Shown: positions 1 through 38,916 of the stretch, one piece after another
How positions within the stretch are numbered: the stretch's first letter is position 1
How the letters are laid out: every line of letters starts with the position of its first letter
From: Octopus bimaculoides
Lineage: Eukaryota
Direction: 5' to 3'
Length of the DNA stretch: 39,243 nt
NCBI RefSeq assembly: GCF_001194135.2
Contig: NC_069000.1
Span: forward strand, 18,265,159 to 18,304,401
The notes under the pieces: model-generated
Database searches by the model: none
What the model was told of the DNA's origin: nothing
What the model saw: only the letters and a program-made list of their open reading frames with translations
Program-made: the position numbers and the translations under genes

Positions 1-300
1 AAATGGCTGAAGTCCAAAAGATAGTGCTCATGGGAACTGCCCATATCCTACGTAAAATACTGTCTATGTGATCTCAAATTTTAAAGCAAACATAATTTTC
101 TTATGGTTTCTTAAACATTCACTTGAACAAAACTGTACAAATCCAAATATATGGTACCCTAGGCATAACACCTACATGAACTTCTAACTTGTTGTCTCTT
201 GAGGTCTCTGGGTGAGACTTGGATCCAACTTGTACAAATGCAAAACAAAAGTCAAACATAAAATAATAATAATAATAATGATGATGATGATGATGATGAT
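1..300 (+). mobile_element. 3' end of a non-LTR retrotransposon with a restriction-like endonuclease (R4/Dong/Hero-like), ending in (TAA)n
   Basis: Bases 3-71 encode MAEVQKIVLMGTAHILRKILSM*, resembling the QKxxLxGTAxILR C-terminus of RLE-type elements. A ~190-nt UTR follows, then AAT/GAT repeats from ~260. Confidence 0.6.
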
Positions 301-426
301 AAGAGCAATAATAATAATAATAATAATAATTATTATTATTATTATTATTATTATGATAAAAGCAATAATAATAAATTGAGGTTATTACTAAGTGATGATG
401 ATGATGATTCTGTTGTCTTTATACAG

Positions 427-506
427 CTCTACATAAAAGGAGAGAGCAAAGAATGTATCAACAATGACGTTCGAACTCTTGCACTGAAAGCTGCCACCAC
501 ATTAGT
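427..506 (+). CDS. MROH1: MROH1 exon a (LYIKGESKECINNDVRTLALKAATTL+gt), phase 0 to 2
   Basis: Acceptor tttatacag, donor GTATCCTTT. Aligns with human AYIRAEPPDSLRTPIRKKAMLTCTYLV. GT plus the T of the next exon makes Val. Confidence 0.88.
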
Positions 507-3500
507 GTATCCTTTTTTTTTAGTCAAAAGTCTCAATTAAAATCCTCATCCTCCTTCAAATTTCCATTTACCAATCACTCACTCGTCTTCTTACCAATTG
601 TTTCCTACATCAAGTTAACACACTCTTTTTTTTTTTTTCATTTTTTTTTCTTTTTTTTTTAAGTAGGATATGGAGTCATATCTAATAACTAGGTCAATAG
701 TTGGCTCAGTCTACTAGTTAAACCTATCATTTAGAGTTCTGCTGCATCCATTGTATTGTCGAAAGAAACTGACATTTGATGGCTGAAGTGAATTCACTGT
801 AAAAGATAACTGTTGTTAAGAAGCTTGCTTTGCAGCCACATGATTTTGGATTCAGTCTCACTAAACAGCTCCTTGGGCAAGTGTCTTCTGCTATATATTG
901 GGTTGTCTGAAAAGTTCATGCCGATTTATAGTAGCTTACCTTTCGACTTATTTGCCATGAAAAAAATAGTACTTGAATACTGTAGGTAGAGCTATTTGCC
1001 TTTTTATTAAAAGCTGCAAAAACATCTCAAAAAAACCATGACTCAGTTTCACATTTTTGTTCATCAGACAATCTTGATTACATCTGTCCATCGAACGGGA
1101 AAGTGAAGCTGTGTGTCACAGTTTTTTGTTATGGTTTTGCAGCTTTTAATAAAAAATACATACATACATATATATATACAGAGAGAGAGAGAGAGAGGTG
1201 TATAAATATGCACATGCAGAGACACAAACACATGTATGCATGCTACCCTCCGTCTCTGGCAAAATAAACACACTATCACACAATCAGATATGCATGCCCT
1301 TACTAACACGTATATTCATACAAGCATATTGATGTACATACATATACACCAACATAGAAACGATGAAACATGTATTAGTTGTCTCCCTTGACCCAGATTC
1401 TTTTATTTATAAGTCAACTGGACCCTAAACTAAATGAAAAGGAAGTTGAAGATCTCGTAGAGTCGGCGACCACCAATGTTCTTTCTCTACCCCTTGATGG
1501 CTGTGCGCCAAAGAAGGGCAAAGAAGAGACATACGAGGAAGTTGTTGAAGCTGGGGAACATCTTAAGGATGCCATCAACGCTTTAAACACTCTTTTGAAG
1601 GAGATACTTCGCAAAGATCTCACTCCAAATGGACTTGAAAGTATATTTAAGGTAAATATTTCACATATTCTACTACTTCCGTGCATTTTACTATTCTAAC
1701 ATAAGGGAAAGAGTTTTGTAGGTGACAGTTTGGGATGATGAAGGTATTCATATTTTTTACAGATTTTTATGAGATTTTCCCGAAATTACAAAAGCCATAC
1801 TCATATTTTATTAACAAACTCAACCACTCTCAATTTAATTTGTAATAAAACGACCGTTCGAACCAAAGGAGGATGGCGACGAGACGGAAAAGGCTCCTTT
1901 TAACCTGTCGCACAGTCGAACACAAAAACATGTTACATGACATAGAAGGCTTGTCATGAGAGATACGAGCCAAGTGACAATAAAAGGAACAGAGAGTGAC
2001 AGAGACAACCGTTAGATATATAAAGAGAGTAAGTTTATTAACATAGTGAAACTGTAGTGTCTGTGCGTGCATGCATGCGGCATATATAAATAAGACAATA
2101 CATAAGTCAGGCCTTCGTGTACAAGAGTATGTATGCAACAATATGAATGACGGACTGTCGTATAAGCAAGAGTGTGTATACAATATGTGTGTGTGTGTGA
2201 GAGAGAGAAACACAGAACATAGAAAAAGTGTCTGTAACATAGACTGTAAAAGTCTTAAACACAGAGATAGAGAAATACCAGCTCATATAAGAGTTACACA
2301 AGATGATAGAATGTTCATACGCAGGAAGTTGTGGCCAAGGGAGCAGAGCTGTTGTGTCTCTTGCTGTGTGTGTTGAGCGTCGATGCTGCAACCGGTTACC
2401 TGGTACAGAATATTTTCACAGGTTAGTTCTGACCGTTAAACTTCGTGGATGGGAATAATCCACTCAAACAGTGTCGAGATGTAACCGCGTTTGTAGTTGT
2501 TGGTGTATACTCTGGTAGTGGTGCTGCTGGTGACGACATTGGTGGTGTTGACGTCATCGCTGGAAACTGGCTGGAGCTGTGTTCTGTATGTGTGGTCAGC
2601 GACCAGACCTGTGAGAGGTCTGAAATCGAAGACGACCGACGTCGTTGGAGCGGGCTTATTTACATATGAAATAGGGCTCACCGGAAACCCAGAAAAACTC
2701 TCTCTCACGTGACCTTATTTGAAGGCCACGATTGGACGGTATGCACCCTGGCGTAAAGCAGAACTGGGGACAATTGCTGCGCAAATGAGAACCAATCAGG
2801 GTGGTGAACACAAGGGTCCAAGGCAACCGAAGGCTAGATGTTAGCCGCTTCGTTATCATTTGTGATTGAATGCCCGAGAGAGAGGTTTCATTACAAATTT
2901 GTCAATTTATGAAACAAACGTTCCTTTAAAGAGCAAGTGTATTCATATATAAAAGATAAATAACATTTAACTATTTATTATGAAAAGAGTGAACACCAGT
3001 TTTTGATAAAATATATTTTTATTGAATGTTATTGAAAATCACTTTATATTGCAGAGCTGTGGACTTTGTTTCTTTGTAGACTATTCTGAGAAACACAGGC
3101 CCATAAATATGTACTAGAATAATGTTATAGAGTATTGGTACTCTCTCACTCTCATTTTATTGGGTTGGTGCATAATTATTGCGGGTTTTTTCATCAAATT
3201 TTATTCAACAAAAGCAATAACAACATGTGTCAAAAACATCTTTAACTGATTATTCCGGAGCTAATATAAAACTATGTTATTCTATTTTCAGCACCTCAAA
3301 ATATGGTTATCCTCTTCAAGTGACTTCCACAGAGAAAGAGTTTTGGAAACTTGGTTGTTGTTACTTCGATTTTTCCGTGAAAATGTGAATCCAGTAAACA
3401 CAGTGAGTTTTCCTATAAGACACCAGAAATAGGTTCCATTTAATTAGTTTAGGTTCTCTTCTTTCTCTTCTCTTAACCCTTTAGCATTTAAACCAGTCAT

Positions 3501-13568: not shown

Positions 13569-16500
13569 TATATACATATACACATACATACATACTAGGA
13601 AGGGCATCCAGCTGTAGAAACTCTGCCAAATTTAGATTGGAGCCTGGTGTTGCCATCCGGTTTCACCAGTTCTCAGTCAAGTCGTCCAACCCATGCTAGC
13701 ATGGAAAGCGGACGTTAAACGATGATGATGATGATGATGATGATATACATACACACATACATGAAATAGCATACACATATACAACAGATCAAATGGAAAC
13801 ACTGTTTTATTTTATCAATTACTCACAAACTAATCAATCTTTTACTCAGCCATATTATACCTGTTATAATGAAATAAAGAATACCTTCACAATATTTTAT
13901 TACAGCCTCGTTGTGAAAGCTTTTGGAATGTTATTGGAGAGGGCAAACCTGAAAGACGTCACCAACTATCTACAGGAACATTCCTATTGGACGATGTTTG
14001 AAGACCCTGACAACTACCCTGAGGCCTTTACTGCACTTGCAAGGTGAGCTGCCTTTTTTATTGTTGTTGTTTAACCCCAGATCAGTTCTGATCAATTCAG
14101 ACCTATGATCAAAACCTTTTCAATCACGATTGTCCATCCATCCATCTTCTCTGCCCTCTATTCTTTGGAGGGTCATGGGAGTAGAGTTCTCAGGCATCAA
14201 GTCCACAGAGTCTACCAGAAGCAACTGTCACTAGACTTTCTGGATGGATTCCCAAGTATGACTAACTGAAACTATGGATATTATCCAATCATTTTACTTG
14301 TTTTGGTCTGCACCAAGGTCTTGTACTGGTTGGCTCAACTTGGAGAATCTGTTTTGTGACTCTTTCTTGCAACATTCTAATCACATGTCCATAACACTGG
14401 TGCTGTGATCTGTCAATGTGGAGAGATAACAGCTCAACCTGGAGAAACTCCCTGATCTCCAGGCCAAGCACCCTGTCAAGTAATGTTACTGATGAAACAG
14501 ATCAAATACCTTGCAGTATTTTTGTTCTTTCTCTTCATATTTGGAGTTCAAATCATGTTAGAATCAATTAAGGAAATGAAGTATCAGCCAAGTACTGGTA
14601 TAAGGTATTTGACTGATCTCCATCCTTCCCCTTGTATGTGTCCTTGTGTCTGAGATAGACATACTTATTAACAGGGTTTTTTATTCCTATGGTGGAGAAA
14701 GAATGTCTAAATTATAATATAAATGCCAGATTACCTTTTGTTATAGTATAAAGTACTGGGATTTACAATGCTTATGTAATGTTAATCATAAATACATTCT
14801 ATTTCAGTGCAGAGTTCAACCATGCATTGATCAATGTACTTCTCTTCAAATATAAATGCTATATTCATGTAGTGTTCATATTTCACGAGTGTTGATTAAT
14901 ACATGATTGAACTTTAATGAATACAATATAAAGTTTAAGCATGTATTCATTGATGTTCTTTTTATTGAATGTCAAAGCAATATTAATACTAAATATATGC
15001 AGAATATAAATCTGCCATTCAGTTTAAGCATGCATGCATCAATTCAGTCTAGTTTAGGCATGCAGCATGAATTTTATACCCGTTGAGAATGCCATTCAAC
15101 AATGTGATTCACTTTAAGCATGTGATTGGTGATGCTTTTCTCATGGAATGTTAAAATAATGTGAATGCCCACCACATCCAGAATGCTATGTATTAGACAA
15201 GCATGCATTCATTTCTTATTTTCCCTTATCTCTTATCTTTTGGTTCCAGTTCTGTAAATCTTGAAATTAATGCAATATTTCCAAATTGGAATTTAAAAAG
15301 CAGACTATAAACATGGTTAGCCAAGAATTTAATATTTTTAGCTAAAAGTGCCAAAAAAAATGGCCTCTATTTGGTTGCTTGACCTGCTAGAAACAACATC
15401 CAAGTTTCCTTCATATATCCTACTACTTTTAAAAGAAGGACATCTGTGTATCTAAAGTAATATAATCATGAGTACACTATACCATTGGCTAATATAGGTT
15501 GATGGTAGCTAAAATACCATTGATCAGAGATCTGCTAACTTGTGACTGATGTAAAGTTAAACAATAGCAACAATAATATCACATTTTTAGACTACACTAG
15601 AACAATAGTTTAGATTATAGATGAACAATAAAGCTTAATTCAACCTGAAGATTATTGACGAGCTGCTGAGGAAATTTCAAGCTTGGATTAATAATTACTG
15701 AGGGTTTGGAAGATCAAGACAGATTGAGTGTTAACATAATCTAAAGTAGAGGAGTAGCAAAATATCATAACGATGACCTAAAGACCTTGCAGTATCTAGT
15801 TACAAATTTCATTGGTCTGAGTTCCAATTTCACCTGGGTTGGTTTTGCTTCTCATCTCCCTGTGTTCAATAATATAGGTATCTACAAGAAATATATACCA
15901 CTGTCTGCCAAATTTACTATAGTCCCCTACCTTACAAAATTTTTAGTTTATGACGTGTGGACATGGCTGTATGGCTTAAAAGTTTGCTTCCCAACCACAT
16001 GGTTTCAGGTTCAGTCCCACTGTGTGCTACCCTGGGCAAGTGTCTTCTACTGTAGCTCCATGCTGACCAAAGCCTTGAGAATGGATTGTATATTTCAACT
16101 TTGAACTATGAACTTTCAGTTGGGGTAACCACAACAATCAGTTCTATATTGTATAACCATCACCACAACAACAATATGTGATAATGATGTAGATTATAAC
16201 AATGATGATGATGAGGAGGATGACAAATATTTACAACAAAGTTGACAATACAGACACATGTGTGGCTGTGTGAGAAAAAGCTTGCTTCCCAACCACATGG
16301 TTCCAGGTTCAGTCCCACTCTGTGACACCATGGGCAAGTACCTTGTACTATAGCCTTAGGCTGACCAAAGCCTTGTGAGTAGATTTGGTAGACAGAAACT
16401 GAAAGAAGCCTGTCATATATACGTGTGTGTGTGTGTGCCTTTGTATTTAGGTTTATCCCCCACCATCGCTTGACAACTGATGTTGGTGTGTTTACGTCCC

Positions 16501-17703
16501 CATAACTTACCAGTTTGGCAAAACAGACTGATAGAATTAGTATCAGGCTTTAAAAAAAAATAAGTACTGGGGTTGATTCATTCAACTAAAAATTCCTCAA
16601 GGCACTGCTCCAGCATGGCCACAGTCTTATGACTGAAACAAGTAAAAATAAAAGAATATACATACCTGATTAATTCAATCACTATATCATCACATACAGT
16701 AACCTAATTAGTTCAACTCTATCTTTTACAGAACTCTTTCACAAAACAACCCCAACTTTATACCTCAGATTGTTATTACTCTACACCCTGCTTTACCTAG
16801 TTATCATGAGCCCCAGAGAATAGTGACTGCTGCTTTCTATGCTGAGGTAAATCTATCTCTTATATTCTTTCTTTACTTTATTGATCTAGATGTCTTTCTT
16901 ACTGTCTCTCTGTCTTTCTCTTTGTCAACATATCTATATATATATATTGCCAATTAACCACAGGCACTATATACTTGGTCTTCACTTCAGATTTATCATT
17001 ATTCTTATTTTAATATCCTTTGTCTGAAATCTTTTGTCACATCCTTTTGTCCGCTTCAACAATTCTCCTTCTGGTGTGTCTTCTCCTGTTCTGTTCAGTC
17101 CATTCTAAACAGAACAGTAGGAGGCACATGGAATAGAGTCATTGAAGAGGTCATGGGATGTGTGATGAAAAATTTCAGACAAAGAAACTAAAATAAGAAT
17201 AATAATAAAGCTGAAATGAAGATCAAATATATAGTGTACATGTTTAATTGGCAAAATATGACCATCCCCAAGTATAACAATATATATATACTTATCTATA
17301 TATATACATATATATANNNNNNNNNNNNNNNNNNNNNNNNNNNNNNNNNNNNNNNNNNNNNNNNNNNNNNNNNNNNNNNNNNNNNNNNNNNNNNNNNNNN
17401 NNNNNNNNNNNNNNNNNNNNNNNNNNNNNNNNNNNNNNNNNNNNNNNNNNNNNNNNNNNNNNNNNNNNNNNNNNNNNNNNNNNNNNNNNNNNNNNNNNNN
17501 NNNNNNNNNNNNNNNNNNNNNNNNNNNNNNNNNNNNNNNNNNNNNNNNNNNNNNNNNNNNNNNNNNNNNNNNNNNNNNNNNNNNNNNNNNNNNNNNNNNN
17601 NNNNNNNNNNNNNNNNNNNNNNNNNNNNNNNNNNNNNNNNNNNNNNNNNNNNNNNNNNNNNNNNNNNNNNNNNNNNNNNNNNNNNNNNNNNNNNNNNNNN
17701 NNN

Positions 17704-20700: not shown

Positions 20701-23700
20701 GAGTTATATGTTGGATGTGCAGTTATGATATGTGGAATAGGATTTATGACATAGCAGATACAGATTTATCACATATTGAATGTGGAGTTATTATGTGTTG
20801 TAAATGTTGGATATGGAGTTGTGACATTAAATGTTGGATGTAGTCTTAAGATGATGTATGTGAAGTTTTATGATGGTGAATGTGAAGCCTTAAAGTGGTG
20901 GATCTGAAGTCATGAGATGTTGGATGTGAAATCTTAAGATGTTGAATGTAAAGTTTTAAGATGTTGGTTGTAATGTCTTAAGATGTTGGTTGTAAAGTCT
21001 TAAGATGTTGGTTGTAAAGTCTTAAGATGTTGGTTGTAAAGTCTTAAGATGTTGGTTGTAAAGTCTTATGATGCTAGATGTGAAGTCTTATGTTGTTGGA
21101 TGTGAAATCTTAAGATGGTGGATGTGAAGACTTGAAGTTCAATACGGTGTTGTAAGAAGTTAGGTGTGATGTTAGGAAGTTATTAATGTAAAGTTAGGAT
21201 ACAATGAATGTGAAGTTATGAGAGGGATGTGTAGTTACAATAGGTTCGCATGTATATTATTTAGACTGAAGATATGGAGTTATGAAAGCTACCAATGACC
21301 TCACTAATATGACCTGGGAGTCTTAAGATGGTGGATGTGAAGTTTTATGATGTTGGATGTGAAGTGTTAAGGTGGTGGATCTGAAGTCACGAGATGTTGG
21401 ATGTGAAATCTTAAGATGTTGAACGTAAAGTCTTAAGATGTTGGATGCAAAATCTTAAGATGGCAGTGAGCTGGCAGAATCATTACCACGCTGGGCAAAA
21501 TGCTTAGTGACATTTTGACCATCCTTACATTCTGAGTCCAAGTTCTGCCAAGGTTGACTTTACCTTTCATCCTTTCAGGGTCGATAAAATAAGTATCAGT
21601 TGTACACTAGGGGTCAATGTAATCAACTATCCCCCTTCCCCCAAATTGCTGGCCTTGTACCAAAATTTGAAATCAATATGACTTGGGAGCTACCAGCTCA
21701 AAAGGTCAGTAGGAGGTCAGTAGTTCCCATCTTGTCACTAGTGGTATACTGTATCCAGGAATTAGCCTCTAAATTCTTAAATGTCCTGTTCAATTACCTA
21801 ATTATCAGCATGTTTTTTGTACCTGTTTGTATGGTGAAGAGGACCAGATCCCATAAATCTTTGCATACTACTTTCGTAAGTGGGATTGATGTGGTGATTG
21901 ATATTACCCAGTCAGAATATATGTGCAAATCCTTCTACCTGACAGGTAATTCTGATGTGATGTAATTGATGTTATCCTGTCTGAACATCTACACTCCCTT
22001 TTACCAGACTGGTAAGATTGATGTGACTGATGTTGCCCAGCCCAAACGTATGCAGGGAAAACTACAAATGGGGAGAGAAAGCCAAGTATTTGGTCCAAGT
22101 ACTTGAAATAAAACTACATGGTATCCACAAAGTCTGGGTACATGGAGTAAATAAAATCATAACATAAACAATTAAATATAAGAAATAATAATTTCTTAAA
22201 GTATGTGTTAATCCCCATGTACCCAGACTTTGTGGACACCCTGTATAATTGCCAAGGGCACCAAATATCAGTGATTGTGTTAAGGTGGACTTGCTACTTC
22301 ATTGAAAAACTAAAAATATAAACAGGCCTTGGTGTTTGTTATCAGGGTATCAACCTTGATAGGTTTTTCAACTGGGAAAGAAAGATAAGATAATTTGAAT
22401 AGAGATTTGTATGTAGAAATGAGGCTGAGGTTTAACATAGTAAGGATTTGTTGAAAGGGGTGGTTGGTGCATAGACATAACACATTGCTCTCTTCAAGAC
22501 TACCCAGTGTGGAGCCTTCATGTAGATACTCAACATGCTGAAATAGCCAGGAATTTCTCCTTCAACTCACACCCTACCATATGATAAAAAAACACATTGG
22601 ATTATAGATAACTAAATTACAACAGGTATATAGTCCATTTTTTGTATTATAGTGCATTGTTGTACCATTCAAAACTTTTTATTCTTTACAAACAATACAC
22701 AATGCTTCAAGCGAACTACAATACTCTCACATTGGATAATATTACTGAGGTGCCTGATTCAAGAAGAAAAGATGGTATAATAATGGCTAAATGCACCTTT
22801 GTTCATAATCCTGTTTGCTCCTTCAGGGCTGATCTGGGACTTAATAACAGCAACATCTGATTTTGGGGCGTCTTCAGCAGAGTTTACTCCACTGTAAGCA
22901 TTTATATCATCATCCACATTTCTTCCTGTAGATATTGACCTGCATATGTTTGGGCTGGGCATTGACCACCTCAGTCTAAACTACTCTGTGGAATTAAGGC
23001 CTGCAAAGGTTATGATGAAGATGGGGCTATTCCTTTACCCCAAATCAGGGGTTTTCAAACTTTTTGACTTGCGGACCCCTTTGTATTTCAGGCTTTACCT
23101 TAGGGACCCCCTTTTAAACGCTTATGAAATTTATACATAAATATTTGCTTAAAATAACATATATTTTTACATTTATTTATTTAACAGTATTTAACAAATA
23201 GGTTTATTGTCAATTAAAAGATTTCAATTAAAAAACATATATAAAATCAAATTGCCCATAAAAAGTATTTGCTCTCCACAGNNNNNNNNNNNNNNNNNNN
23301 NNNNNNNNNNNNNNNNNNNNNNNNNNNNNNNNNNNNNNNNNNNNNNNNNNNNNNNNNNNNNNNNNNNNNNNNNNNNNNNNNNNNNNNNNNNNNNNNNNNN
23401 NNNNNNNNNNNNNNNNNNNNNNNNNNNNNNNNNNNNNNNNNNNNNNNNNNNNNNNNNNNNNNNNNNNNNNNNNNNNNNNNNNNNNNNNNNNNNNNNNNNN
23501 NNNNNNNNNNNNNNNNNNNNNNNNNNNNNNNNNNNNNNNNNNNNNNNNNNNNNNNNNNNNNNNNNNNNNNNNNNNNNNNNNNNNNNNNNNNNNNNNNNNN
23601 NNNNNNNNNNNNNNNNNNNNNNNNNNNNNNNNNNNNNNNNNNNNNNNNNNNNNNNNNNNNNNNNNNNNNNNNNNNNNNNNNNNNNNNNNNNNNNNNNNNN

Positions 23701-26700
23701 NNNNNNNNNNNNNNNNNNNNNNNNNNNNNNNNNNNNNNNNNNNNNNNNNNNNNNNNNNNNNNNNNNNNNNNNNNNNNNNNNNNNNNNNNNNNNAGCAATA
23801 TTACCATTACTGTGGTTTTCATCATAATCGTCATATCATCCTCTTCATCATCACCATTAATATTACCATCATCATCATTATCATCCTCATAGCAATTATC
23901 ATAACTAACATCATCTCAATTATTGTCTGCAGCAGCAGCATCATTATTATCACCATCATCATCATCATCATCAACTGTTATCTGTAGCAGCAATATTACC
24001 ATTACTGTGGTTATCATCATAATCGTCATATCATCCTCTTCATCATCACCATTAATATTACCATCATCATCATCATCATCATCATTGATCTTTGTATGCA
24101 AGTGTAGGTGTGTGTAAGTGTATGTACTCTTTTACTGGTTTTTGAGTCAGTGATATGTTGCCATGCTGGAGTACCACCATCAGTGCTGTTGTAGAATTCA
24201 TTAGATAAACCAATTTTGAATGCCCAACTTCAAATAGATAAACCAATTTTGAATGCCCAACTTCTCTTCTACTGTTGACTACCCTTTATGGCAATGTAAG
24301 CTGCTGAGGAAGAAGTGTCTGCTTCCATCCAAAGAATTTAGTAACATTCATACCTCCAGGCAAAAATCCATCTTTCAAAAGTTTTCAGTCTGCTCTCACA
24401 AACATATATGATATTCCTCTCACCTTATTATTAATAATAATCTTTCACTTTCTCTCTTCTTTCTCCCTGTTCTCCATCTCTACAGGAAGTGCCTTGTGTG
24501 CGTGCTGAAGCAATCCTACTGTTTGGCAATTTGTCCAGATTTGGAGGAGGACAATCAAAAGCAGCCATACTGGAACAAATTCATTCAAATTTTGTTAGTT
24601 TGTTGTTACATTTAAATGATGCTGAGGTGGATGTACGCAAGGTAAAAATCTACTCCTGAAACAATTCACATTTAATTTTATAATTTTGTGATGATACTTC
24701 CTTTTTGTGTTTAGTTTGCAAGATTCTTGATGTGAATTTGTGTGTTGAAACAAATTTTGTTGTAGAGTGTGATAGTTCGCTTGAAGCATTGTAATATTGA
24801 AGAAGGTAAAAACAGAAAAAATAGAAAGCTTCTAACAATGCAGAAAGTTTTATAAAACCTTTATATTTCAGGTGCAAAGGCCCATATTCGGAAGAAAAAC
24901 AGTCTGGGAAATGTTCAGTTATGCAGGTTCTATTAACCCATTCAAATCCTCTGGCATTATGTAGCAGCAGCAGTCACTCTCCAAACATAGGTTTAATCAA
25001 TGCTCCAAGCATTGTAGCAATAGTTGGAAGTTTGTTTACACCAACACTTGAAGCATCAATTCCACTAATGGTTGGAGAGTGACTGCTGCTGCTACATAAT
25101 GCCAAGGGATTTGAGTAGATTAACAGAACCTGCATAACTGGACATTTTCCAGACTGTTTTTCTTCTGAAGATTAGCCTTTGTGCCTGAAATATAAAGGCT
25201 TTATAAAACTTTCCATATTGTCAGAAGCTTTCTATTTTCTCTCTTTTTATCTTCTTCAAACACAGTCATGCATGTCTGCACCTATTAGTGTTAATGCAAA
25301 ATATATTCAAACAATGATCACATATGTAGATAGAATATTTAGCAATATAAAATATACTGAAGTACCAACTAACTGTGTGGAGGAAGGCGTTCACACACAG
25401 AAGTGCATAGCAACACAATTTCTATCAGATATTGGTGGTTATAACAGTTTACAGTACAAAATGCATACCTATATTGACTATGTAAACAGAGAAATTCATT
25501 CTCACACATATATTGTTACATAGCCTTGTAACTTCTATTAAATATTTATACCAGTAATAGATAATAATGCACATTTAACCACTGATACAGCAAAGAAACA
25601 TATTCACACATACATAAGTACTTAGGAACACAACTTCTATCAAACATTGGTGGCTGTAATAGTTAATATCTCTTTTTTTATTTTTTACTTATTTCAGTTG
25701 TTGAACTGTGACCATGCTGGGACACATCCTTGAAGGGTGTAGTTGAGATAATCAATTCTAGTACTTATTTTAAAGTCTGGTGCTTATTCTATTGGTCTCT
25801 TTTGCCAAACCGCTAAGTTACATCGGTATAAACACCCAACACTGGTCATCAAGCAGTGGATGGGTACAAACAAAAACACACACATGCACACATAATATAC
25901 ACATAGGTGGAATTCTGGTTTAAGCATCCCGTATAACCTCTGATGGCTCTTTTATTTTTTGGAATTTTCAGAAAATTGTTGTCAATTTGTATTCTATACA
26001 TGGGAATTCATGCAATTTTGAAAGAAAATTTTTTTGTATGTGATTTAAGGGTGACTTAGCTGTTGTTTTTAGTACATCTCATGACCACATGATACCTTGC
26101 TCATTTCTTGATGTTTTTCAATATTTTTCTCGCCATAAACATTTAATGGAATGATGATGCACCCAGGGGTGCTCCATTGCTGGGACTTAAGCAAAAGCTT
26201 CAGACTCTCTTTACTCTTTCACTTGTTTCAGTCATTTGACTGTGGCCATGCTGGAGCAAATCGACCCCAGGACTTATTCTTTGTAAGCGCAGTACTTATT
26301 CTATCGGTCTCTTTTGCCGAACCACTAAGTTACAGGGACGTAAACACACCAGCATCGGTTGTCAAGCGATGTTGGGGGGACAAANNNNNNNNNNNNNNNN
26401 NNNNNNNNNNNNNNNNNNNNNNNNNNNNNNNNNNNNNNNNNNNNNNNNNNNNNNNNNNNNNNNNNNNNNNNNNNNNNNNNNNNNNNNNNNNNNNNNNNNN
26501 NNNNNNNNNNNNNNNNNNNNNNNNNNNNNNNNNNNNNNNNNNNNNNNNNNNNNNNNNNNNNNNNNNNNNNNNNNNNNNNNNNNNNNNNNNNNNNNNTTAA
26601 ACTGTCCATATTTTAAACTCTGATTTTAAAGTAAAATTCAAAAACCCGTGGAAATTTTAGGATTTGTGGGAGCAGGGTTAAGAAATAGAAGGAGAACATT

Positions 26701-29363
26701 TTTTTTCCATATTTGTATGAATTCTTGTGTAGAACATAAATTTGCAAAAATTTTCTGAAAATTCCAAAACCAGAATTCCATCTACACACATACACATGCA
26801 TGCACACACACGCACGCACACACATGTATATATGTATGTATGTATGTATGTATACACATATATACAGTGAGTTTCCATCTACCAAATTCCCTCCGAAGGC
26901 ATTGGTCAGCCTGGGGCTATAGTAGAAAACACTCCCCTAGGGTGTTGCACAGTGGGATTGAACCTAAACCTGCATATTTCCAAAACAAGCTTCTTAACCA
27001 CACAGCCATACTTGCACCTATTAGTATGAAAATATAGTCAAATACGAACTCTTTATGTAGATTTAGTAGTTAGCAATAAAAAAAATAGTCAAATACTGAC
27101 CACATGTATAATTGTATTAATTGGTAGTGTAAAAATAAGCAAATACTAATCATATATGTATATAACAAAATTTCATTTGTTAACTTTCTTGTTAATATTC
27201 ATTAACATAGTTTTGATTATGTTAATTGAAAAGGCGAGTTGTGTCTTTCTTTTTTAGCCCTAAGTCAACTCCAATAAACCAAACCTATAATCAAAGATAT
27301 TCAAGCCATGCCCTCCTATCTTTCTTCTAGGCCAACTATATTCAAAGGTTACATGATTCAATGTATCCTTTCTTCTTTAAGAAAATTGGGTGTGATATAA
27401 GGAGATACTGGCTGCTATTTCTAGCAGCTCAAGCGACCATATAGAGGCTCGCATGCTGGTTGATGAGGCAGCAGGAACGAAACCACTGGTTTTCTCCTTT
27501 AGGCAGGATTAATATCATGTTACCTATGAATGCCATGGTTATTACGTCAGTCCTGATGAAGCAAATCCATGATTAAAGACATTCTATCAGTGGCCAACCA
27601 TCCTTCTGTTTTTTTTTTTATTGTTTCCTTTTGCATTCCGCATTCTCAGCTTATTGAAGACCATATCATCCATTGTGTCCTTCCTTTTTCTTAAGGTAAT
27701 AAGGTGTAATTTGAAGGAGACTTGGCTGCTATTTCTGGTGGAAGAATGAAATACATGGCTCACTTGTGTCAGTGGTGGCAGTGGTGGTGGTGGCAGCAGT
27801 GGTGGTTGTGGGGGATAGTGATATCATAGTGGTGGAGGTGTCGGTAGTGGTGATTAAAGTGGTATAATAGTAGTAGTGGTGGTGGTGGTGGTGGTGGTGT
27901 TTGTAGTGACGATGTGGCGAGCTGGCAGAATTGTTAGCACGCCAAGCGAAATGCTTAGCAGTATTTTGTCTGCCGTTATGTCCTGAGTTCAAATTCTGCC
28001 ATGGTTGACTTTGCCTTTCATCCTTTCAGGGTTGATTAAATAAGTACCAGTTACATACTGGGATCGATTTAATTGACTTAATCCCTTTGTCTGTCCTTGT
28101 TTGTCCCTTCTATGTTTTGCCCCATGTGGGCAATAAAGATATAAATATTTTAAAATTTTCTATTTCCAGGCTTGTAAATTCACATTGCGGTCATTGGGAT
28201 CATTATTAGACTGCCCAAAGATTGATGAGAAGTTCCAAAAGCTTCTCTTAGATGATGCCAACTTGTATTACGGAGAATTCATGAACGACATTTCCAAACT
28301 AATCGTAAGAGCAAGTTTTATGGTTTTATTGTTGTTGTTGTTGTTGTGGTGGAGGTAATAATGATAATTGTTGTTGTTGATTAATCCTATATCAATCCTA
28401 ACTGAGTAGACCTCTGATTAACAGTCATGATCCATGCATACAAGCTTGTCGATTCAGGTACTGGTGCTGCATAAACACACCTGTGCTGATGCTGTGTAGA
28501 TGCACCCATGCCAGTGCTGCATAGATGTATTCATGCTAGTGCAGCATAAATGCACCTGTGCCACTGCTGCATAAATGCATCCATGCTGCTGCATAAATGC
28601 ACCTATGCCAGTGCTGCATAGACACACTCATGCCAGTGCTGCATAAGCGCACCCATGCTGGTAGCACATAAAAGTCACCCACTACACTCTGTTAAGTGTT
28701 TGGTGCTAGGAAGGGCATCCAGCCATAGAAACTATGCCACAACAGATAACTGGAGTTTGAACAGCTCCCAGCAAGCCAGCTCCATGTCAAGCCATTCAAC
28801 TCATGCCAGCATGGAAAGCAGATGTTAAACAATGTTAATGGTGATGATGATGATCACACACACGTATAGTTGTCATCATTATCATCAATTTTTGCATTCC
28901 ATACTGACATGGAGTGGATAGATGGTTTGACAGAATCCAGTTAGCAAGATGACTGCATTGAACTCCATTGTCTGTTTTGGCATGATTTCTATAGCTGGAT
29001 GTCAACTACCTAATGTCAACTAATGTCAACTACCCTACAGAGTGTACTGGCTGCTTCTTTCATGGCAGTAGCTCTAGAGAGGTCACCAAGTAACTCGCAA
29101 GATGAGACTCCTTGACTGAGAGTGGTAGCTTTGTGCCAGTTGTTGGGTGACTGAAATATAATAAAGGAACAAGAACAGATGTGTTGCTATAGAGGAGATA
29201 CATGACTACTCCAACACACACACACAGAATTCATAAAACACAAAAGACAGGGACAAGTGGTGTAGACAACAAACAGATGTATTAGTTCAATGCTCAGGAA
29301 GTGAAAAAGTCTTTAATGTTTCGAGCCTACGCTCTTCCACAGAAAGGAACACAGAAAGAAACT

Positions 29364-29404
<41 letters not shown>

Positions 29405-30795
29405 TACTACTTTCTTCAACATATCCTTCTTAGTCCAAGACAGCACTTGGCTGGTACTTTATTTTATTGTCTCCTGGAAGAATGAAAGGCAAAGTTGACC
29501 TCAGCAAAATTTGAAGTCAAAACATAAAGGGCTGCAACTAAACACATTTTGTTTGATACTTGAATGATTCTGTCCATACACTGCATTTATAAACACACAC
29601 ACACACACACATGTGTATGTTGTATCTATCTGTGGGTCAATGCCAGTGCTGCCTGACTGGCTCCCCCATGTCAGTGGCACTTAAAAAGCACCATTCAAAC
29701 ATGGTTGATGCCAGTTCCCCCTGACTGACTCCCATGCCAGTGGCATATAAAAAGCACCATCTGAACGTGGTCGATACCAGTGCCATCTGACTGGCTCCCA
29801 TACTGGTGGCACATAAAAGCATCCACTACACTCTCAGAGTAGTTGGCATTGGGAAGGGCATCCAACTGTAGAAACCTTTCCAGATCAGATTGGAGCCTGG
29901 TGCAGCCTACTGGCTTGCCAGTCCTCAGTCAAACCGTCCAACCCTTGCCAGCATGGAAAACAGACGCTAAACAATGATGATGATGATGTTATATATATAT
30001 ATATATGTTAAATCTTTGAACGAGGTATTAACAGTAACTGCACGATAAAGTGAAGTATATTTGCCACTTAAATGTGGCTGACCCCGAGGGGTGGATGTTA
30101 CTGTTGCTTTTAGATGTGTGTCGNNNNNNNNNNNNNNNNNNNNNNNNNNNNNNNNNNNNNNNNNNNNNNNNNNNNNNNNNNNNNNNNNNNNNNNNNNNNN
30201 NNNAGTGGCAAATATACTTAACTATACATATATATATATATATATGTATGTATAATAAAAGCATCGAAGAATAAAGTAAGCGATATTGATTTTAATACAC
30301 TGTTTACAACTGTTTCACTACTTCACATTTTAACTACTCCTGCATCATGTTTGTTAGTGTGTTAGCAATTATTGATTCTGTTTTCTGCACTGTGTAAATA
30401 GTTTTTTCTTGTACATATGGTAATTGATTCATCAGATCATTGCAAAGAGCAATAAGCTGATTAATTTGGTGACTTCACCAATAAGTATTCTCATCACTTT
30501 CAAAAGTGGGCACATCTTAATAATCTTATTCATTCAAGGCAAAGATGGGAAGAAATAGAAGCAGAAATAATTTGACAAAATAATTGACTCGGTTCCACTT
30601 TATTCAGTGTTTCATAGACACAAATTAGCATGTACATTTTTAGATGTATGTCTGAAGATGTAGCTGCTTATCTGTGCTTATGAAACTTTAAGAAATGTAA
30701 AGTCGAATCAATGTGTTGTTAAATACAACTCCAACTAATGTTGAGTAATACTTTCTTTTGATTGTTCATCTACCTGTCTTTTTATCTCTCTATTT

Positions 30796-37720: not shown

Positions 37721-38916
37721 CGTGTGTATGTGTATATANNNNNNNNNNNNNNNNNNNNNNNNNNNNNNNNNNNNNNNNNNNNNNNNNNNNNNNNNNNNNN
37801 NNNNNNNNNNNNNNNNNNNNNNNNNNNNNNNNNNNNNNNNNNNNNNNNNNNNNNNNNNNNNNNNNNNNNNNNNNNNNNNNNNNNNNNNNNNNNNNNNNNN
37901 NNNNNNNNNNNNNNNNNNNNNNNNNNNNNNNNNNNNNNNNNNNNNNNNNNNNNNNNNNNNNNNNNNNNNNNNNNNNNNNNNNNNNNNNNNNNNNNNNNNN
38001 NNNNNNNNNNNNNNNNNNNNNNNNNNNNNNNNNNNNNNNNNNNNNNNNNNNNNNNNNNNNNNNNNNNNNNNNNNNNNNNNNNNNNNNNNNNNNNNNNNNN
38101 NNNNNNNNNNNNNNNNNNNNNNNNNNNNNNNNNNNNNNNNNNNNNNNNNNNNNNNNNNNNNNNNNNNNNNNNNNNNNNNNNNNNNNNNNNNNNNNNNNNN
38201 NNNNNNNNNNNNNNNNNNNNNNNNNNNNNNNNNNNNNNNNNNNNNNNNNNNNNNNNNNNNNNNNNNNNNNNNNNNNNNNNNNNNNNNNNNNNNNNNNNNN
38301 NNNNNNNNNNNNNNNNNNNNNNNNNNNNNNNNNNNNNNNNNNNNNNNNNNNNNNNNNNNNNNNNNNNNNNNNNNNNNNNNNNNNNNNNNNNNNNNNNNNN
38401 NNNNNNNNNNNNNNNNNNTATATATATATATATGTATATATATATGTATAGATACGTAAATATACATTTATATATAGGTAGGTAGATACATATAAATATA
38501 TATTCAAAGTGCTGACTGACCACTGCTCAAGTTTTATGTTTTTATACCAACAAAATTTGAGTAACAAGTCTCCCAGTCTCAGCTTTGAATATATATTATC
38601 CTACTTCCTCATATTGATTACTTTTTATGTTTAATTACCTTCACACCTGTATGCAACCATTCATAATCACACACACACATATACTTATGCATATTTATAT
38701 ATGTTTATGTTGGTATGTATTTTTTTATATTGACTTCTATTGTCTTGTTAGAGCCTGATGTGTGTTGAAGATTCAGTTTGTTATTGTCACCAATGACTAA
38801 CAGGATCTGTTGTCACCAACCCACTAACTTGTCATCACCAATGACTAAGCAAATCACTTATCAATAATGACTAACTGCTATTTCCACATATGCTTTGTCA
38901 ATCCAATACACATGAC

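What the first reader, a model, noticed from the sequence alone, without database searches (positions are those of the whole stretch)
507..1413. U12-type minor-spliceosome intron in MROH1
Seen: this is the only donor of the 17 that reads GTATCCTTT, the full U12 5' consensus. TCCCTTGAC (8/9 match to TTCCTTRAC) puts the branch A at 1391, 22 nt before the 3' splice site. The nearer AG at 1395-1396 would give a stop (TAA at 1410-1412), so 1413 is the only in-frame acceptor. Known: U12 introns are rare, slowly spliced and depleted in phase 0; this one is phase 2. Inference: MROH1 expression here depends on the minor spliceosome, and annotation pipelines could mis-split the gene at this point.
Basis: partly seen in the sequence, partly recalled or inferred. 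Interest (0 to 1): 0.72.

Follow-up and report, generated by a model that had tools for sequence, protein, structure and literature searches.

The report
Conserved U12-type intron in MROH1
The stretch 507-1413 is a genuine minor-spliceosome (U12-type) intron in an MROH1 gene, but it is the counterpart of a minor intron already catalogued in human and mouse MROH1 and conserved from sea anemone to primates, so it is correct but ordinary.

Summary
Exon 427-506 ends ...TTAGT|GTATCCTTT. TCCCTTGAC lies at 1384-1392 with its A at 1391. AG 1412-1413 precedes exon 1414-1651, and the intron is phase 2 inside a Val codon. I built weight matrices from human minor introns. With them the donor ties for first of 39,232 + strand positions and the branch site ranks fourth. 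Every other donor tested (11 of the 15 others located) scores negative. Dozens of MROH1 proteins align without a gap across the predicted junction TLV|QLDP.

The same codon is split by a GTATCCTT intron in a gastropod, a sea anemone, a spider and a primate. Three of the four carry a strong U12 branch site 11-12 nt from the acceptor; in the spider the branch site is degenerate. Caenorhabditis, from a group that lacks minor splicing, has a 49-nt GTAAGT intron at that position.

The peculiarities are a 22-nt gap between branch point and acceptor (optimum 11-13), an AAG acceptor, a decoy AG 5 nt after the branch A, and an in-frame U2-like alternative (505/1396). No RNA data could be reached, so the splicing itself is inferred.

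The parts
427..506 (+). Upstream MROH1 exon (80 nt, LYIKGESKECINNDVRTLALKAATTL + GT of the Val codon). It is preceded by the acceptor ...tttatacag.
   Evidence: tblastn and blastp with Babylonia P0005 and other MROH1 proteins match this exon.
507..515 (+). U12-type 5' splice site GTATCCTTT. Exon positions -2/-1 are GT, not AG.
   Evidence: The weight-matrix score is 15.0 bits, equal to the median of 44 human GT-AG minor 5' splice sites and tied for rank 1 on the + strand. The same sequence sits at the same codon in four other animals.
507..1413 (+). The intron: 907 nt, GT-AG, phase 2, rich in simple repeats.
1382..1393 (+). U12-type branch-point 12-mer TCTCCCTTGACC (core CCTTGAC). The presumed branch A is at 1391, 22 nt before the intron end.
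   Evidence: Score 11.4 bits, equal to the median of 77 human minor branch sites, and rank 4 of 39,232. The next best candidate in the last 60 nt scores 3.5 bits.
1395..1396 (+). Decoy AG 5 nt after the branch A. With donor 507 it gives a stop at 1410-1412. With donor 505 it gives an in-frame U2-like alternative (+ILLFIS, -V).
1412..1413 (+). The 3' splice-site AG (context tttataAG|TCAA), the first AG far enough from the branch A.
   Evidence: The junction TLV|QLDP matches homologues without a gap.
1414..1651 (+). Downstream MROH1 exon (238 nt, T of the Val codon + QLDPKLNEKEVEDL...GLESIFK), followed by the ordinary U2 donor GTAAAT.

Best explanation
Positions 507-1413 are a GT-AG U12-type (minor-spliceosome) intron of an MROH1 orthologue. 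It is the direct counterpart of the minor intron catalogued in human and mouse MROH1.

The likely mechanism rests on established knowledge of minor splicing and is not shown here:
1. The U11/U12 di-snRNP recognises GTATCCTTT (507-515) and CCTTGAC (1386-1392) together.
2. The A at 1391 attacks the 5' splice site.
3. The AG at 1395-1396 is too close to the branch point to be used.
4. The next AG (1412-1413) is ligated to exon 1414-1651, restoring the Val codon GT|T and the conserved peptide ...TLVQLDP....

The intron is ancient. It dates at least to the cnidarian-bilaterian ancestor and kept its U12 donor in most lineages sampled. In a nematode it was converted to an ordinary U2-type intron.
For: **Sequence shown directly**
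- Motifs, coordinates and phase are as described.
- The exon -2/-1 bases are GT, not AG. No validated GT-AG U12 intron has AG there (PMC10853781). A U at -1 is the base over-represented in GT-AG U12 introns (PMC7367187).

**Computed**
- The donor scores 15.0 bits and the branch site 11.4 bits. Both sit at the median of the human minor introns from MIDB Table S2 and rank tied-1st and 4th of 39,232 positions.
- The 11 other window introns I scored have donor scores of -3 to -17 bits.

**Junction**
- More than 40 MROH1 homologues align across the junction with blastp. Most are ungapped there; examples are Babylonia ATLVKLDPPLSEAEVFDLV and P0009 TLVKLDPPL.
- Pfam HEAT_Maestro_2 spans the junction.

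**Orthologous introns at the same Val codon and phase**

| Species | Donor | Branch site | A to 3' splice site |
|---|---|---|---|
| Babylonia | GTATCCTTG | CTCTCCTTAACT | 11 nt |
| Nematostella | GTATCCTTT | CATTCCTTGACC | 11 nt |
| Uloborus | GTATCCTTT | TTACACTTAACT (2.9 bits) | 11 nt |
| Carlito | GTATCCTTT | TTGCCCTTAACT | 12 nt |
| C. brenneri | GTAAGT | none; 49-nt intron ending TTTTCAG | not applicable |

**Literature**
- MIDB lists the MROH1/Mroh1 minor intron with GGTGTATCCTTT and GGGCCCTTAACT or GTGCCCTTAACC (PMC6717393 supplement).
- Molluscs, including Octopus sinensis, are relatively rich in minor introns (PMC10639083).
Against: - The distance from branch point to 3' splice site is 22 nt. 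The optimum is 11-13 nt (PMC3584512), and the four U12-type orthologues have 11-12 nt.
- The acceptor is AAG, and a T-rich stretch (TTCTTTTATTTAT) lies between branch site and acceptor, which is more U2-like.
- An in-frame U2-like alternative (505/1396) exists.
- No transcript evidence for this organism was reachable. Both protein searches with the window's own peptides found no same-species protein.
- The organism, and whether it has minor snRNAs, could not be checked from the window.
Confidence: 0.9

Rival explanations
1. The intron has U12-looking signals but is removed, wholly or partly, by the major (U2-type) spliceosome. On this reading it is a 'hybrid' or minor-like intron on its way to conversion. 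The lengthened gap between branch point and acceptor and the T-rich tract would let U2 snRNP and U2AF use the 3' end.
For: - The spacing is 22 nt, against 11-12 nt in the U12-type orthologues.
- 12 of the 16 bases before the acceptor are pyrimidines.
- The literature reports that some GT-AG U12 introns can be spliced by both machineries (PMC10853781).
- A longer branch-point distance goes with unresponsiveness to minor-spliceosome inhibition among minor-like introns (PMC11347168).
- Conversion at this very position happened in Caenorhabditis, and the donor has decayed in the leech.
Against: - The donor is a full U12 consensus with GT, not AG, at exon -2/-1, and is a very poor U1 target (AGT|GTATCC).
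- The branch site scores at the median of human minor introns.
- AAG is a weak U2 acceptor.
Confidence: 0.07
2. The real junction uses the neighbouring U2-like pair, donor TTA|GTGTAT (exon end 504) and acceptor CCCAG|ATT (exon start 1397). This stays in frame and encodes ...TTL-ILLFIS-QLDP.
For: The reading frame is open, and the acceptor has a CAG preceded by a C/T-rich stretch. Cryptic U2-type sites next to minor introns are a known source of alternative splicing.
Against: - It would delete the conserved Val and insert six residues that no homologue has.
- The donor GTGTAT with A at -1 is weak.
- It ignores the fact that the GTATCCTT donor is conserved at exactly this codon in four other animals.
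Confidence: 0.02
3. The U12-like motifs are a chance resemblance in AT-rich intronic DNA.
For: GTATCCTT is expected 1.27 times per window by chance. A second copy exists at 27363 that is not a splice site.
Against: - The motif sits exactly at the homology-defined exon end.
- It is paired with a top-4 branch site in the last 40 nt. Only 0.3% of such stretches hold one.
- It is conserved at the same codon across phyla.
Confidence: 0.01

Closest known systems
Human MROH1 / mouse Mroh1 minor intron (MIDB, Olthof et al. 2019, PMC6717393 Tables S1/S2: human chr8:144243943-144244221, mouse chr15:76433618-76433826)
   Same: - Same gene family.
- GT-AG U12 type, with the donor xGT|GTATCCTTT splitting a Val codon.
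- The branch site is of the CCCTTRAC form, with C instead of T before CCTT, as in the window.
- The primate locus L003 shows that the position in the protein (..YLV|NLEP..) is the same as TLV|QLDP.
   Different: - The mammalian introns are short: 198-279 nt against 907 nt.
- The tarsier has its branch A 12 nt from a CAG acceptor. The window has 22 nt and an AAG acceptor, with an intervening decoy AG.
Orthologous U12-type introns in Babylonia areolata (L002), Nematostella vectensis (L001) and Uloborus diversus (L005)
   Same: Identical position and phase, and a GTATCCTT donor.
   Different: All have the branch A 11 nt from the acceptor. The spider branch site is degenerate (ACACTTAAC, 2.9 bits).
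U2-type intron at the same position in Caenorhabditis brenneri (L007)
   Same: Same codon and phase: GCCTTAGT|...|ACAATTGGAGCC.
   Different: It has a GTAAGT donor and a TTTTCAG acceptor and is 49 nt long. It is an ordinary major intron, as expected in a lineage without a minor spliceosome, and illustrates U12-to-U2 conversion.

Membership tests
U12-type (minor-spliceosome) GT-AG intron | 5' splice site matching RTATCCTT from intron position +1 | tested here: met
   GTATCCTTT at 507-515. It scores 15.0 bits, the median of 44 human GT-AG minor 5' splice sites, and is the top score in the window.
U12-type (minor-spliceosome) GT-AG intron | Branch-point sequence matching TCCTTRAY near the 3' end | tested here: met
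   TCTCCCTTGACC at 1382-1393 with the core CCTTGAC intact. It scores 11.4 bits, the median of 77 human minor branch sites, and ranks 4 of 39,232.
U12-type (minor-spliceosome) GT-AG intron | Short distance from branch point to 3' splice site (optimum 11-13 nt) | tested here: inconclusive
   The distance is 22 nt. That is outside the optimum quoted in PMC3584512. It is still inside the search ranges used by the classifiers: -40 in MIDB and -55..-5 in intronIC. The orthologues have 11-12 nt.
U12-type (minor-spliceosome) GT-AG intron | No AG at exon positions -2/-1 before a GT-type U12 donor | tested here: met
   The exon ends ...TTAGT, so -2/-1 is GT. The criterion comes from PMC10853781.
U12-type (minor-spliceosome) GT-AG intron | No distinct polypyrimidine tract | tested here: inconclusive
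   The 16 nt before the acceptor (TTCTTTTATTTATAAG) are T-rich with 12 pyrimidines. The window as a whole is AT-rich, with about 36% GC.
U12-type (minor-spliceosome) GT-AG intron | Orthologous intron is U12-type in other species | tested here: met
   Babylonia, Nematostella, Uloborus and Carlito share the position, phase and GTATCCTT donor. Human and mouse are listed in MIDB.
U12-type (minor-spliceosome) GT-AG intron | Excision by the U11/U12-U4atac/U6atac spliceosome, and presence of those snRNAs in the organism | not testable with these tools
   No RNA-seq and no genome of the source organism was reachable. No snRNA lies in the window (Rfam found 0 hits). The literature reports minor introns in molluscs, including Octopus sinensis (PMC10639083).
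MROH1 (maestro heat-like repeat family member 1) | HEAT_Maestro domain architecture, with best homologues annotated as MROH1 | tested here: met
   - PF21047 HEAT_Maestro scores 171.6 bits and PF23210 HEAT_Maestro_2 30.3 bits.
- The exons are collinear with Babylonia MROH1 residues 832-1641, apart from one exon of about 48 aa (residues ~1433-1480) and a short stretch (~1264-1289) that were not found.

The most novel reading that the evidence does not exclude
In this lineage the ancient MROH1 minor intron may be caught in an early stage of drifting towards U2-type or 'hybrid' status. Its acceptor has moved to 22 nt from the branch A, behind a decoy AG and a T-rich tract. Splicing might therefore be shared between the two spliceosomes, or unusually inefficient or regulated. 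The leech orthologue shows the same 21-nt spacing with an already decayed donor, which would be a later stage of the same path.
Probability: 0.1. Interest if true: 0.35.

Novelty: already known. Interest (0 to 1): 0.17.

Why it matters
The practical value is for annotation. The 506|1414 junction should be kept when this gene is annotated, because predictors that do not model U12 sites demonstrably misbuild MROH1 at this point. The old Nematostella model is one example and a UniParc vertebrate entry is another.

Biologically, it adds one more data point showing that this minor intron has been held at one codon since before cnidarians and bilaterians split. It was converted to U2-type where the minor spliceosome was lost. 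It does not open a new question. The unusual 22-nt gap between branch point and acceptor is only a small curiosity for people who study how the 3' splice site of U12 introns is chosen.

Tried and rejected
**Searches that led nowhere**
- The search for homologous proteins with the 106-aa joined peptide found nothing.
- The same search with about 588 aa of concatenated exons found only two EukProt transcripts. One of them (P0001) starts exactly at the junction, so it could not test it.
- Full-text searches for MROH1 or HEATR7A together with U12 or 'minor intron' gave nothing relevant. The gene appears only in MIDB supplementary tables.
- A search for papers on the distance from branch site to 3' splice site gave nothing, and PMC60238 is not held.
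- The supplement of PMC10639083 that is held does not list genes.
- The look-up of encoding contigs had no record for P0005.
- Rfam found nothing in the window.

**Uninformative loci**
- The catshark locus (L004) and the acoel locus (L008) are intronless, so they say nothing about the intron.

**Readings considered and rejected**
- The second GTATCCTT at 27363 as a real donor: there is no exon there.
- The AG at 1395-1396 as acceptor for donor 507: it gives a stop codon.
- A weak second branch candidate, GATTCTTTTATT, 8 nt from the acceptor: it scores only 3.5 bits.
- The 505/1396 pair: it contradicts the homology.

**Not found**
- The exon homologous to Babylonia residues ~1433-1480 and the last coding exon.

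Full report
**1. What is in the sequence**

The window is AT-rich, repeat-laden eukaryotic DNA with five assembly gaps. Reading 1-2400 confirms every coordinate in the finding.
- An exon preceded by ...tttatacag starts at 427 and ends ...ACATTAGT at 506.
- GTATCCTTT occupies 507-515.
- TCCCTTGAC occupies 1384-1392, with its single A at 1391.
- AG dinucleotides lie at 1395-1396 and 1412-1413.
- An open exon runs from 1414 to 1651 and is followed by GTAAAT.

Joining 506 to 1414 gives LYIKGESKECINNDVRTLALKAATTLV|QLDPKLNEKEVEDLV.... The intron splits the Val codon GT|T, so it is phase 2.

**2. Gene identity**

tblastn with two EukProt proteins and with Babylonia, spider and other homologues lays out 16 exons on the + strand. 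They are collinear with the C-terminal half of MROH1.

The conceptual protein hits Pfam HEAT_Maestro at 171.6 bits. HEAT_Maestro_2 matches across residues 3-93, which spans the junction. The homologues found by the exhaustive profile search are named 'maestro heat-like repeat-containing protein family member 1' by NCBI and UniRef. The closest available one is the gastropod Babylonia areolata, about 47% identical over the two exons. The source species itself could not be identified with these tools.

**3. Is the junction right?**

More than 40 homologues align across the junction with blastp, most of them without a gap there. Examples are Babylonia ...ATLVKLDPPLSEAEVFDLV, P0009 ...TLVKLDPPL and sawshark ...HLVQLNPRLNEAD. 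Homology therefore fixes 506|1414.

Donor 505 (TTA|GTGTAT) with acceptor 1396 is also open in frame. It would replace the conserved Val with ILLFIS, which no homologue has.

**4. Are the signals U12-type and beyond chance?**

I built weight matrices from 44 GT-type 5' splice sites and 77 branch-site 12-mers of human minor introns, taken from MIDB Table S2.
- The donor AGTGTATCCTTT scores 15.0 bits. That is the training median, and it ties for first of 39,232 + strand positions.
- The branch site TCTCCCTTGACC scores 11.4 bits, also the training median, and ranks fourth.
- Only 0.3% of 29-position stretches hold a branch site that good.
- The 11 other window introns I scored have donor scores from -3 to -17 bits and ordinary GTAAGT- or GTGAGT-like donors.
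- GTATCCTT occurs just twice in the window. The other copy (27363) is not at an exon end.
- Exon positions -2/-1 are GT. U at -1 is the base enriched in GT-AG U12 introns (PMC7367187). The absence of AG there is a property of all validated GT-AG U12 introns (PMC10853781).

**5. Comparative evidence**

Genomic loci were recovered for seven MROH1 genes. Five of them carry an intron in the same Val codon and the same phase as the window.

| Species (locus) | Donor | Branch site | A to acceptor | Intron length |
|---|---|---|---|---|
| Babylonia (L002) | TGT\|GTATCCTTG | CTCTCCTTAACT | 11 nt | 650 nt |
| Nematostella (L001) | TGT\|GTATCCTTT | CATTCCTTGACC | 11 nt | 523 nt |
| Uloborus, spider (L005) | TGT\|GTATCCTTT | TTACACTTAACT (degenerate) | 11 nt | 2112 nt |
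| Carlito, tarsier (L003) | GGT\|GTATCCTTT | TTGCCCTTAACT | 12 nt | 198 nt |
| Caenorhabditis brenneri (L007) | GTAAGT | none; acceptor TTTTCAG | not applicable | 49 nt |
| Helobdella, leech (L006) | GTTCGT (decayed) | CGTCCTTTAACT | 21 nt | 473 nt |

Caenorhabditis, which belongs to a group known to lack minor splicing, keeps the position as an ordinary U2-type intron. The leech keeps the position but its donor has decayed. The catshark contig and the acoel contig carry intronless ORFs and are uninformative.

**6. Already catalogued**

The supplementary tables of Olthof et al. 2019 (PMC6717393) list a minor intron in human MROH1 (chr8:144243943-144244221) and in mouse Mroh1 (chr15:76433618-76433826). 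The human signals are GGTGTATCCTTT and GGGCCCTTAACT. The mouse signals are GGTGTATCCTTT and GTGCCCTTAACC. The 5' 12-mer is identical to the tarsier sequence at the orthologous position, so this is the same intron.

Larue and Roy 2023 surveyed minor introns in more than 3000 genomes, including Octopus sinensis, and note that molluscs are relatively rich in minor introns. The current MIDB covers 263 species, including molluscs. The finding is therefore a correct recognition of a known, deeply conserved minor intron.

**7. The annotation inference**

- The old Nematostella model EDO46470.1 translates straight through the donor (...SLV-YPFVLDLPCLTSF...) and skips the following exon.
- UniParc entry P0079 shows the same LV-YP read-through.
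- The leech model uses a donor 27 nt downstream, which adds nine residues.

**8. What is unusual**

The window is the only U12-type copy with a 22-nt gap between branch point and acceptor. It also has an AAG acceptor, an intervening AG at +5 and a T-rich spacer. The optimum quoted for U12 introns is 11-13 nt (PMC3584512). Among minor-like introns, a longer distance goes with insensitivity to minor-spliceosome inhibition (PMC11347168).

This leaves a modest possibility, about 10%, of hybrid or shared splicing. It cannot be resolved without RNA data. No such data were reachable: protein searches with the window's own peptides returned no same-species sequence.

**9. Verdict**

The mechanism (recognition by U11/U12, branching at A1391, skipping of the too-close AG, ligation at 1413|1414) is inferred from established knowledge of minor splicing. 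Novelty is 'already known', and interest is low.

Noticed in passing
window 27363-27370 and 29109-29128 (+): There is a second perfect GTATCCTT, and 1.75 kb downstream a perfect TCCTTGAC with an AG 13 nt after its A. The pair straddles exon 28170-28304 and has no flanking coding exons by homology. It is probably chance, since 1.3 and 2.4 such motifs are expected per window. In principle it could form a cryptic U12 splice pair.
   Followed up: partly
window 505-506 / 1395-1397 (+): An in-frame U2-like alternative splice pair: donor TTA|GTGTAT and acceptor CCCAG|ATT. It would encode ...TTL-ILLFIS-QLDP. It overlaps the U12 signals and is a candidate cryptic site if minor splicing fails.
   Followed up: partly
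window 17317-17703, 23282-23793, 26385-26596, 30124-30203, 37739-38418: These are assembly gaps (runs of N). The exon homologous to Babylonia MROH1 residues ~1433-1480 was not found between 20322 and 24485 and may lie in the 23282-23793 gap. The last coding exon was not found after 33074.
   Followed up: partly
L001 13233-13880 (Nematostella vectensis DS469527.1): The deposited model EDO46470.1 reads through the U12 donor (LVYPFVLDLPCLTSFHFYSTF) and omits the true next exon (KLNPRLTDAEVFDVVK..., starting at 13756). This is a clear mis-annotation caused by the minor intron.
   Followed up: yes
L006 8712-9184 (Helobdella robusta KB097495.1): The donor at the conserved position has decayed to GTTCGT. 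A U12-like branch site, CGTCCTTTAACT, remains 21 nt from the acceptor. The deposited model uses a donor 27 nt downstream, which inserts FVTFLIWLN. This looks like an intron losing its U12 identity.
   Followed up: partly
L007 3475-3523 (Caenorhabditis brenneri OZ038406.1): A 49-nt GTAAGT...TTTTCAG intron sits at exactly the same codon and phase. This is an example of conversion from U12 to U2 type in a lineage without minor splicing.
   Followed up: yes
L004 501-5429 (Scyliorhinus torazame BFAA01015570.1) and L008 301-5370 (Convolutriloba, ENA contig): Full-length MROH1 ORFs without any intron (4929 and 5070 nt). These may be processed copies, transcript-derived contigs or real intron loss. 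I did not resolve which.
   Followed up: no
window 258-374 and 630-660: A long (ATA/ATG)n microsatellite lies just upstream of exon 427-506, and T-runs lie inside the intron. The intron also holds (TACA)n and (GA)n tracts around 1150-1200.
   Followed up: no
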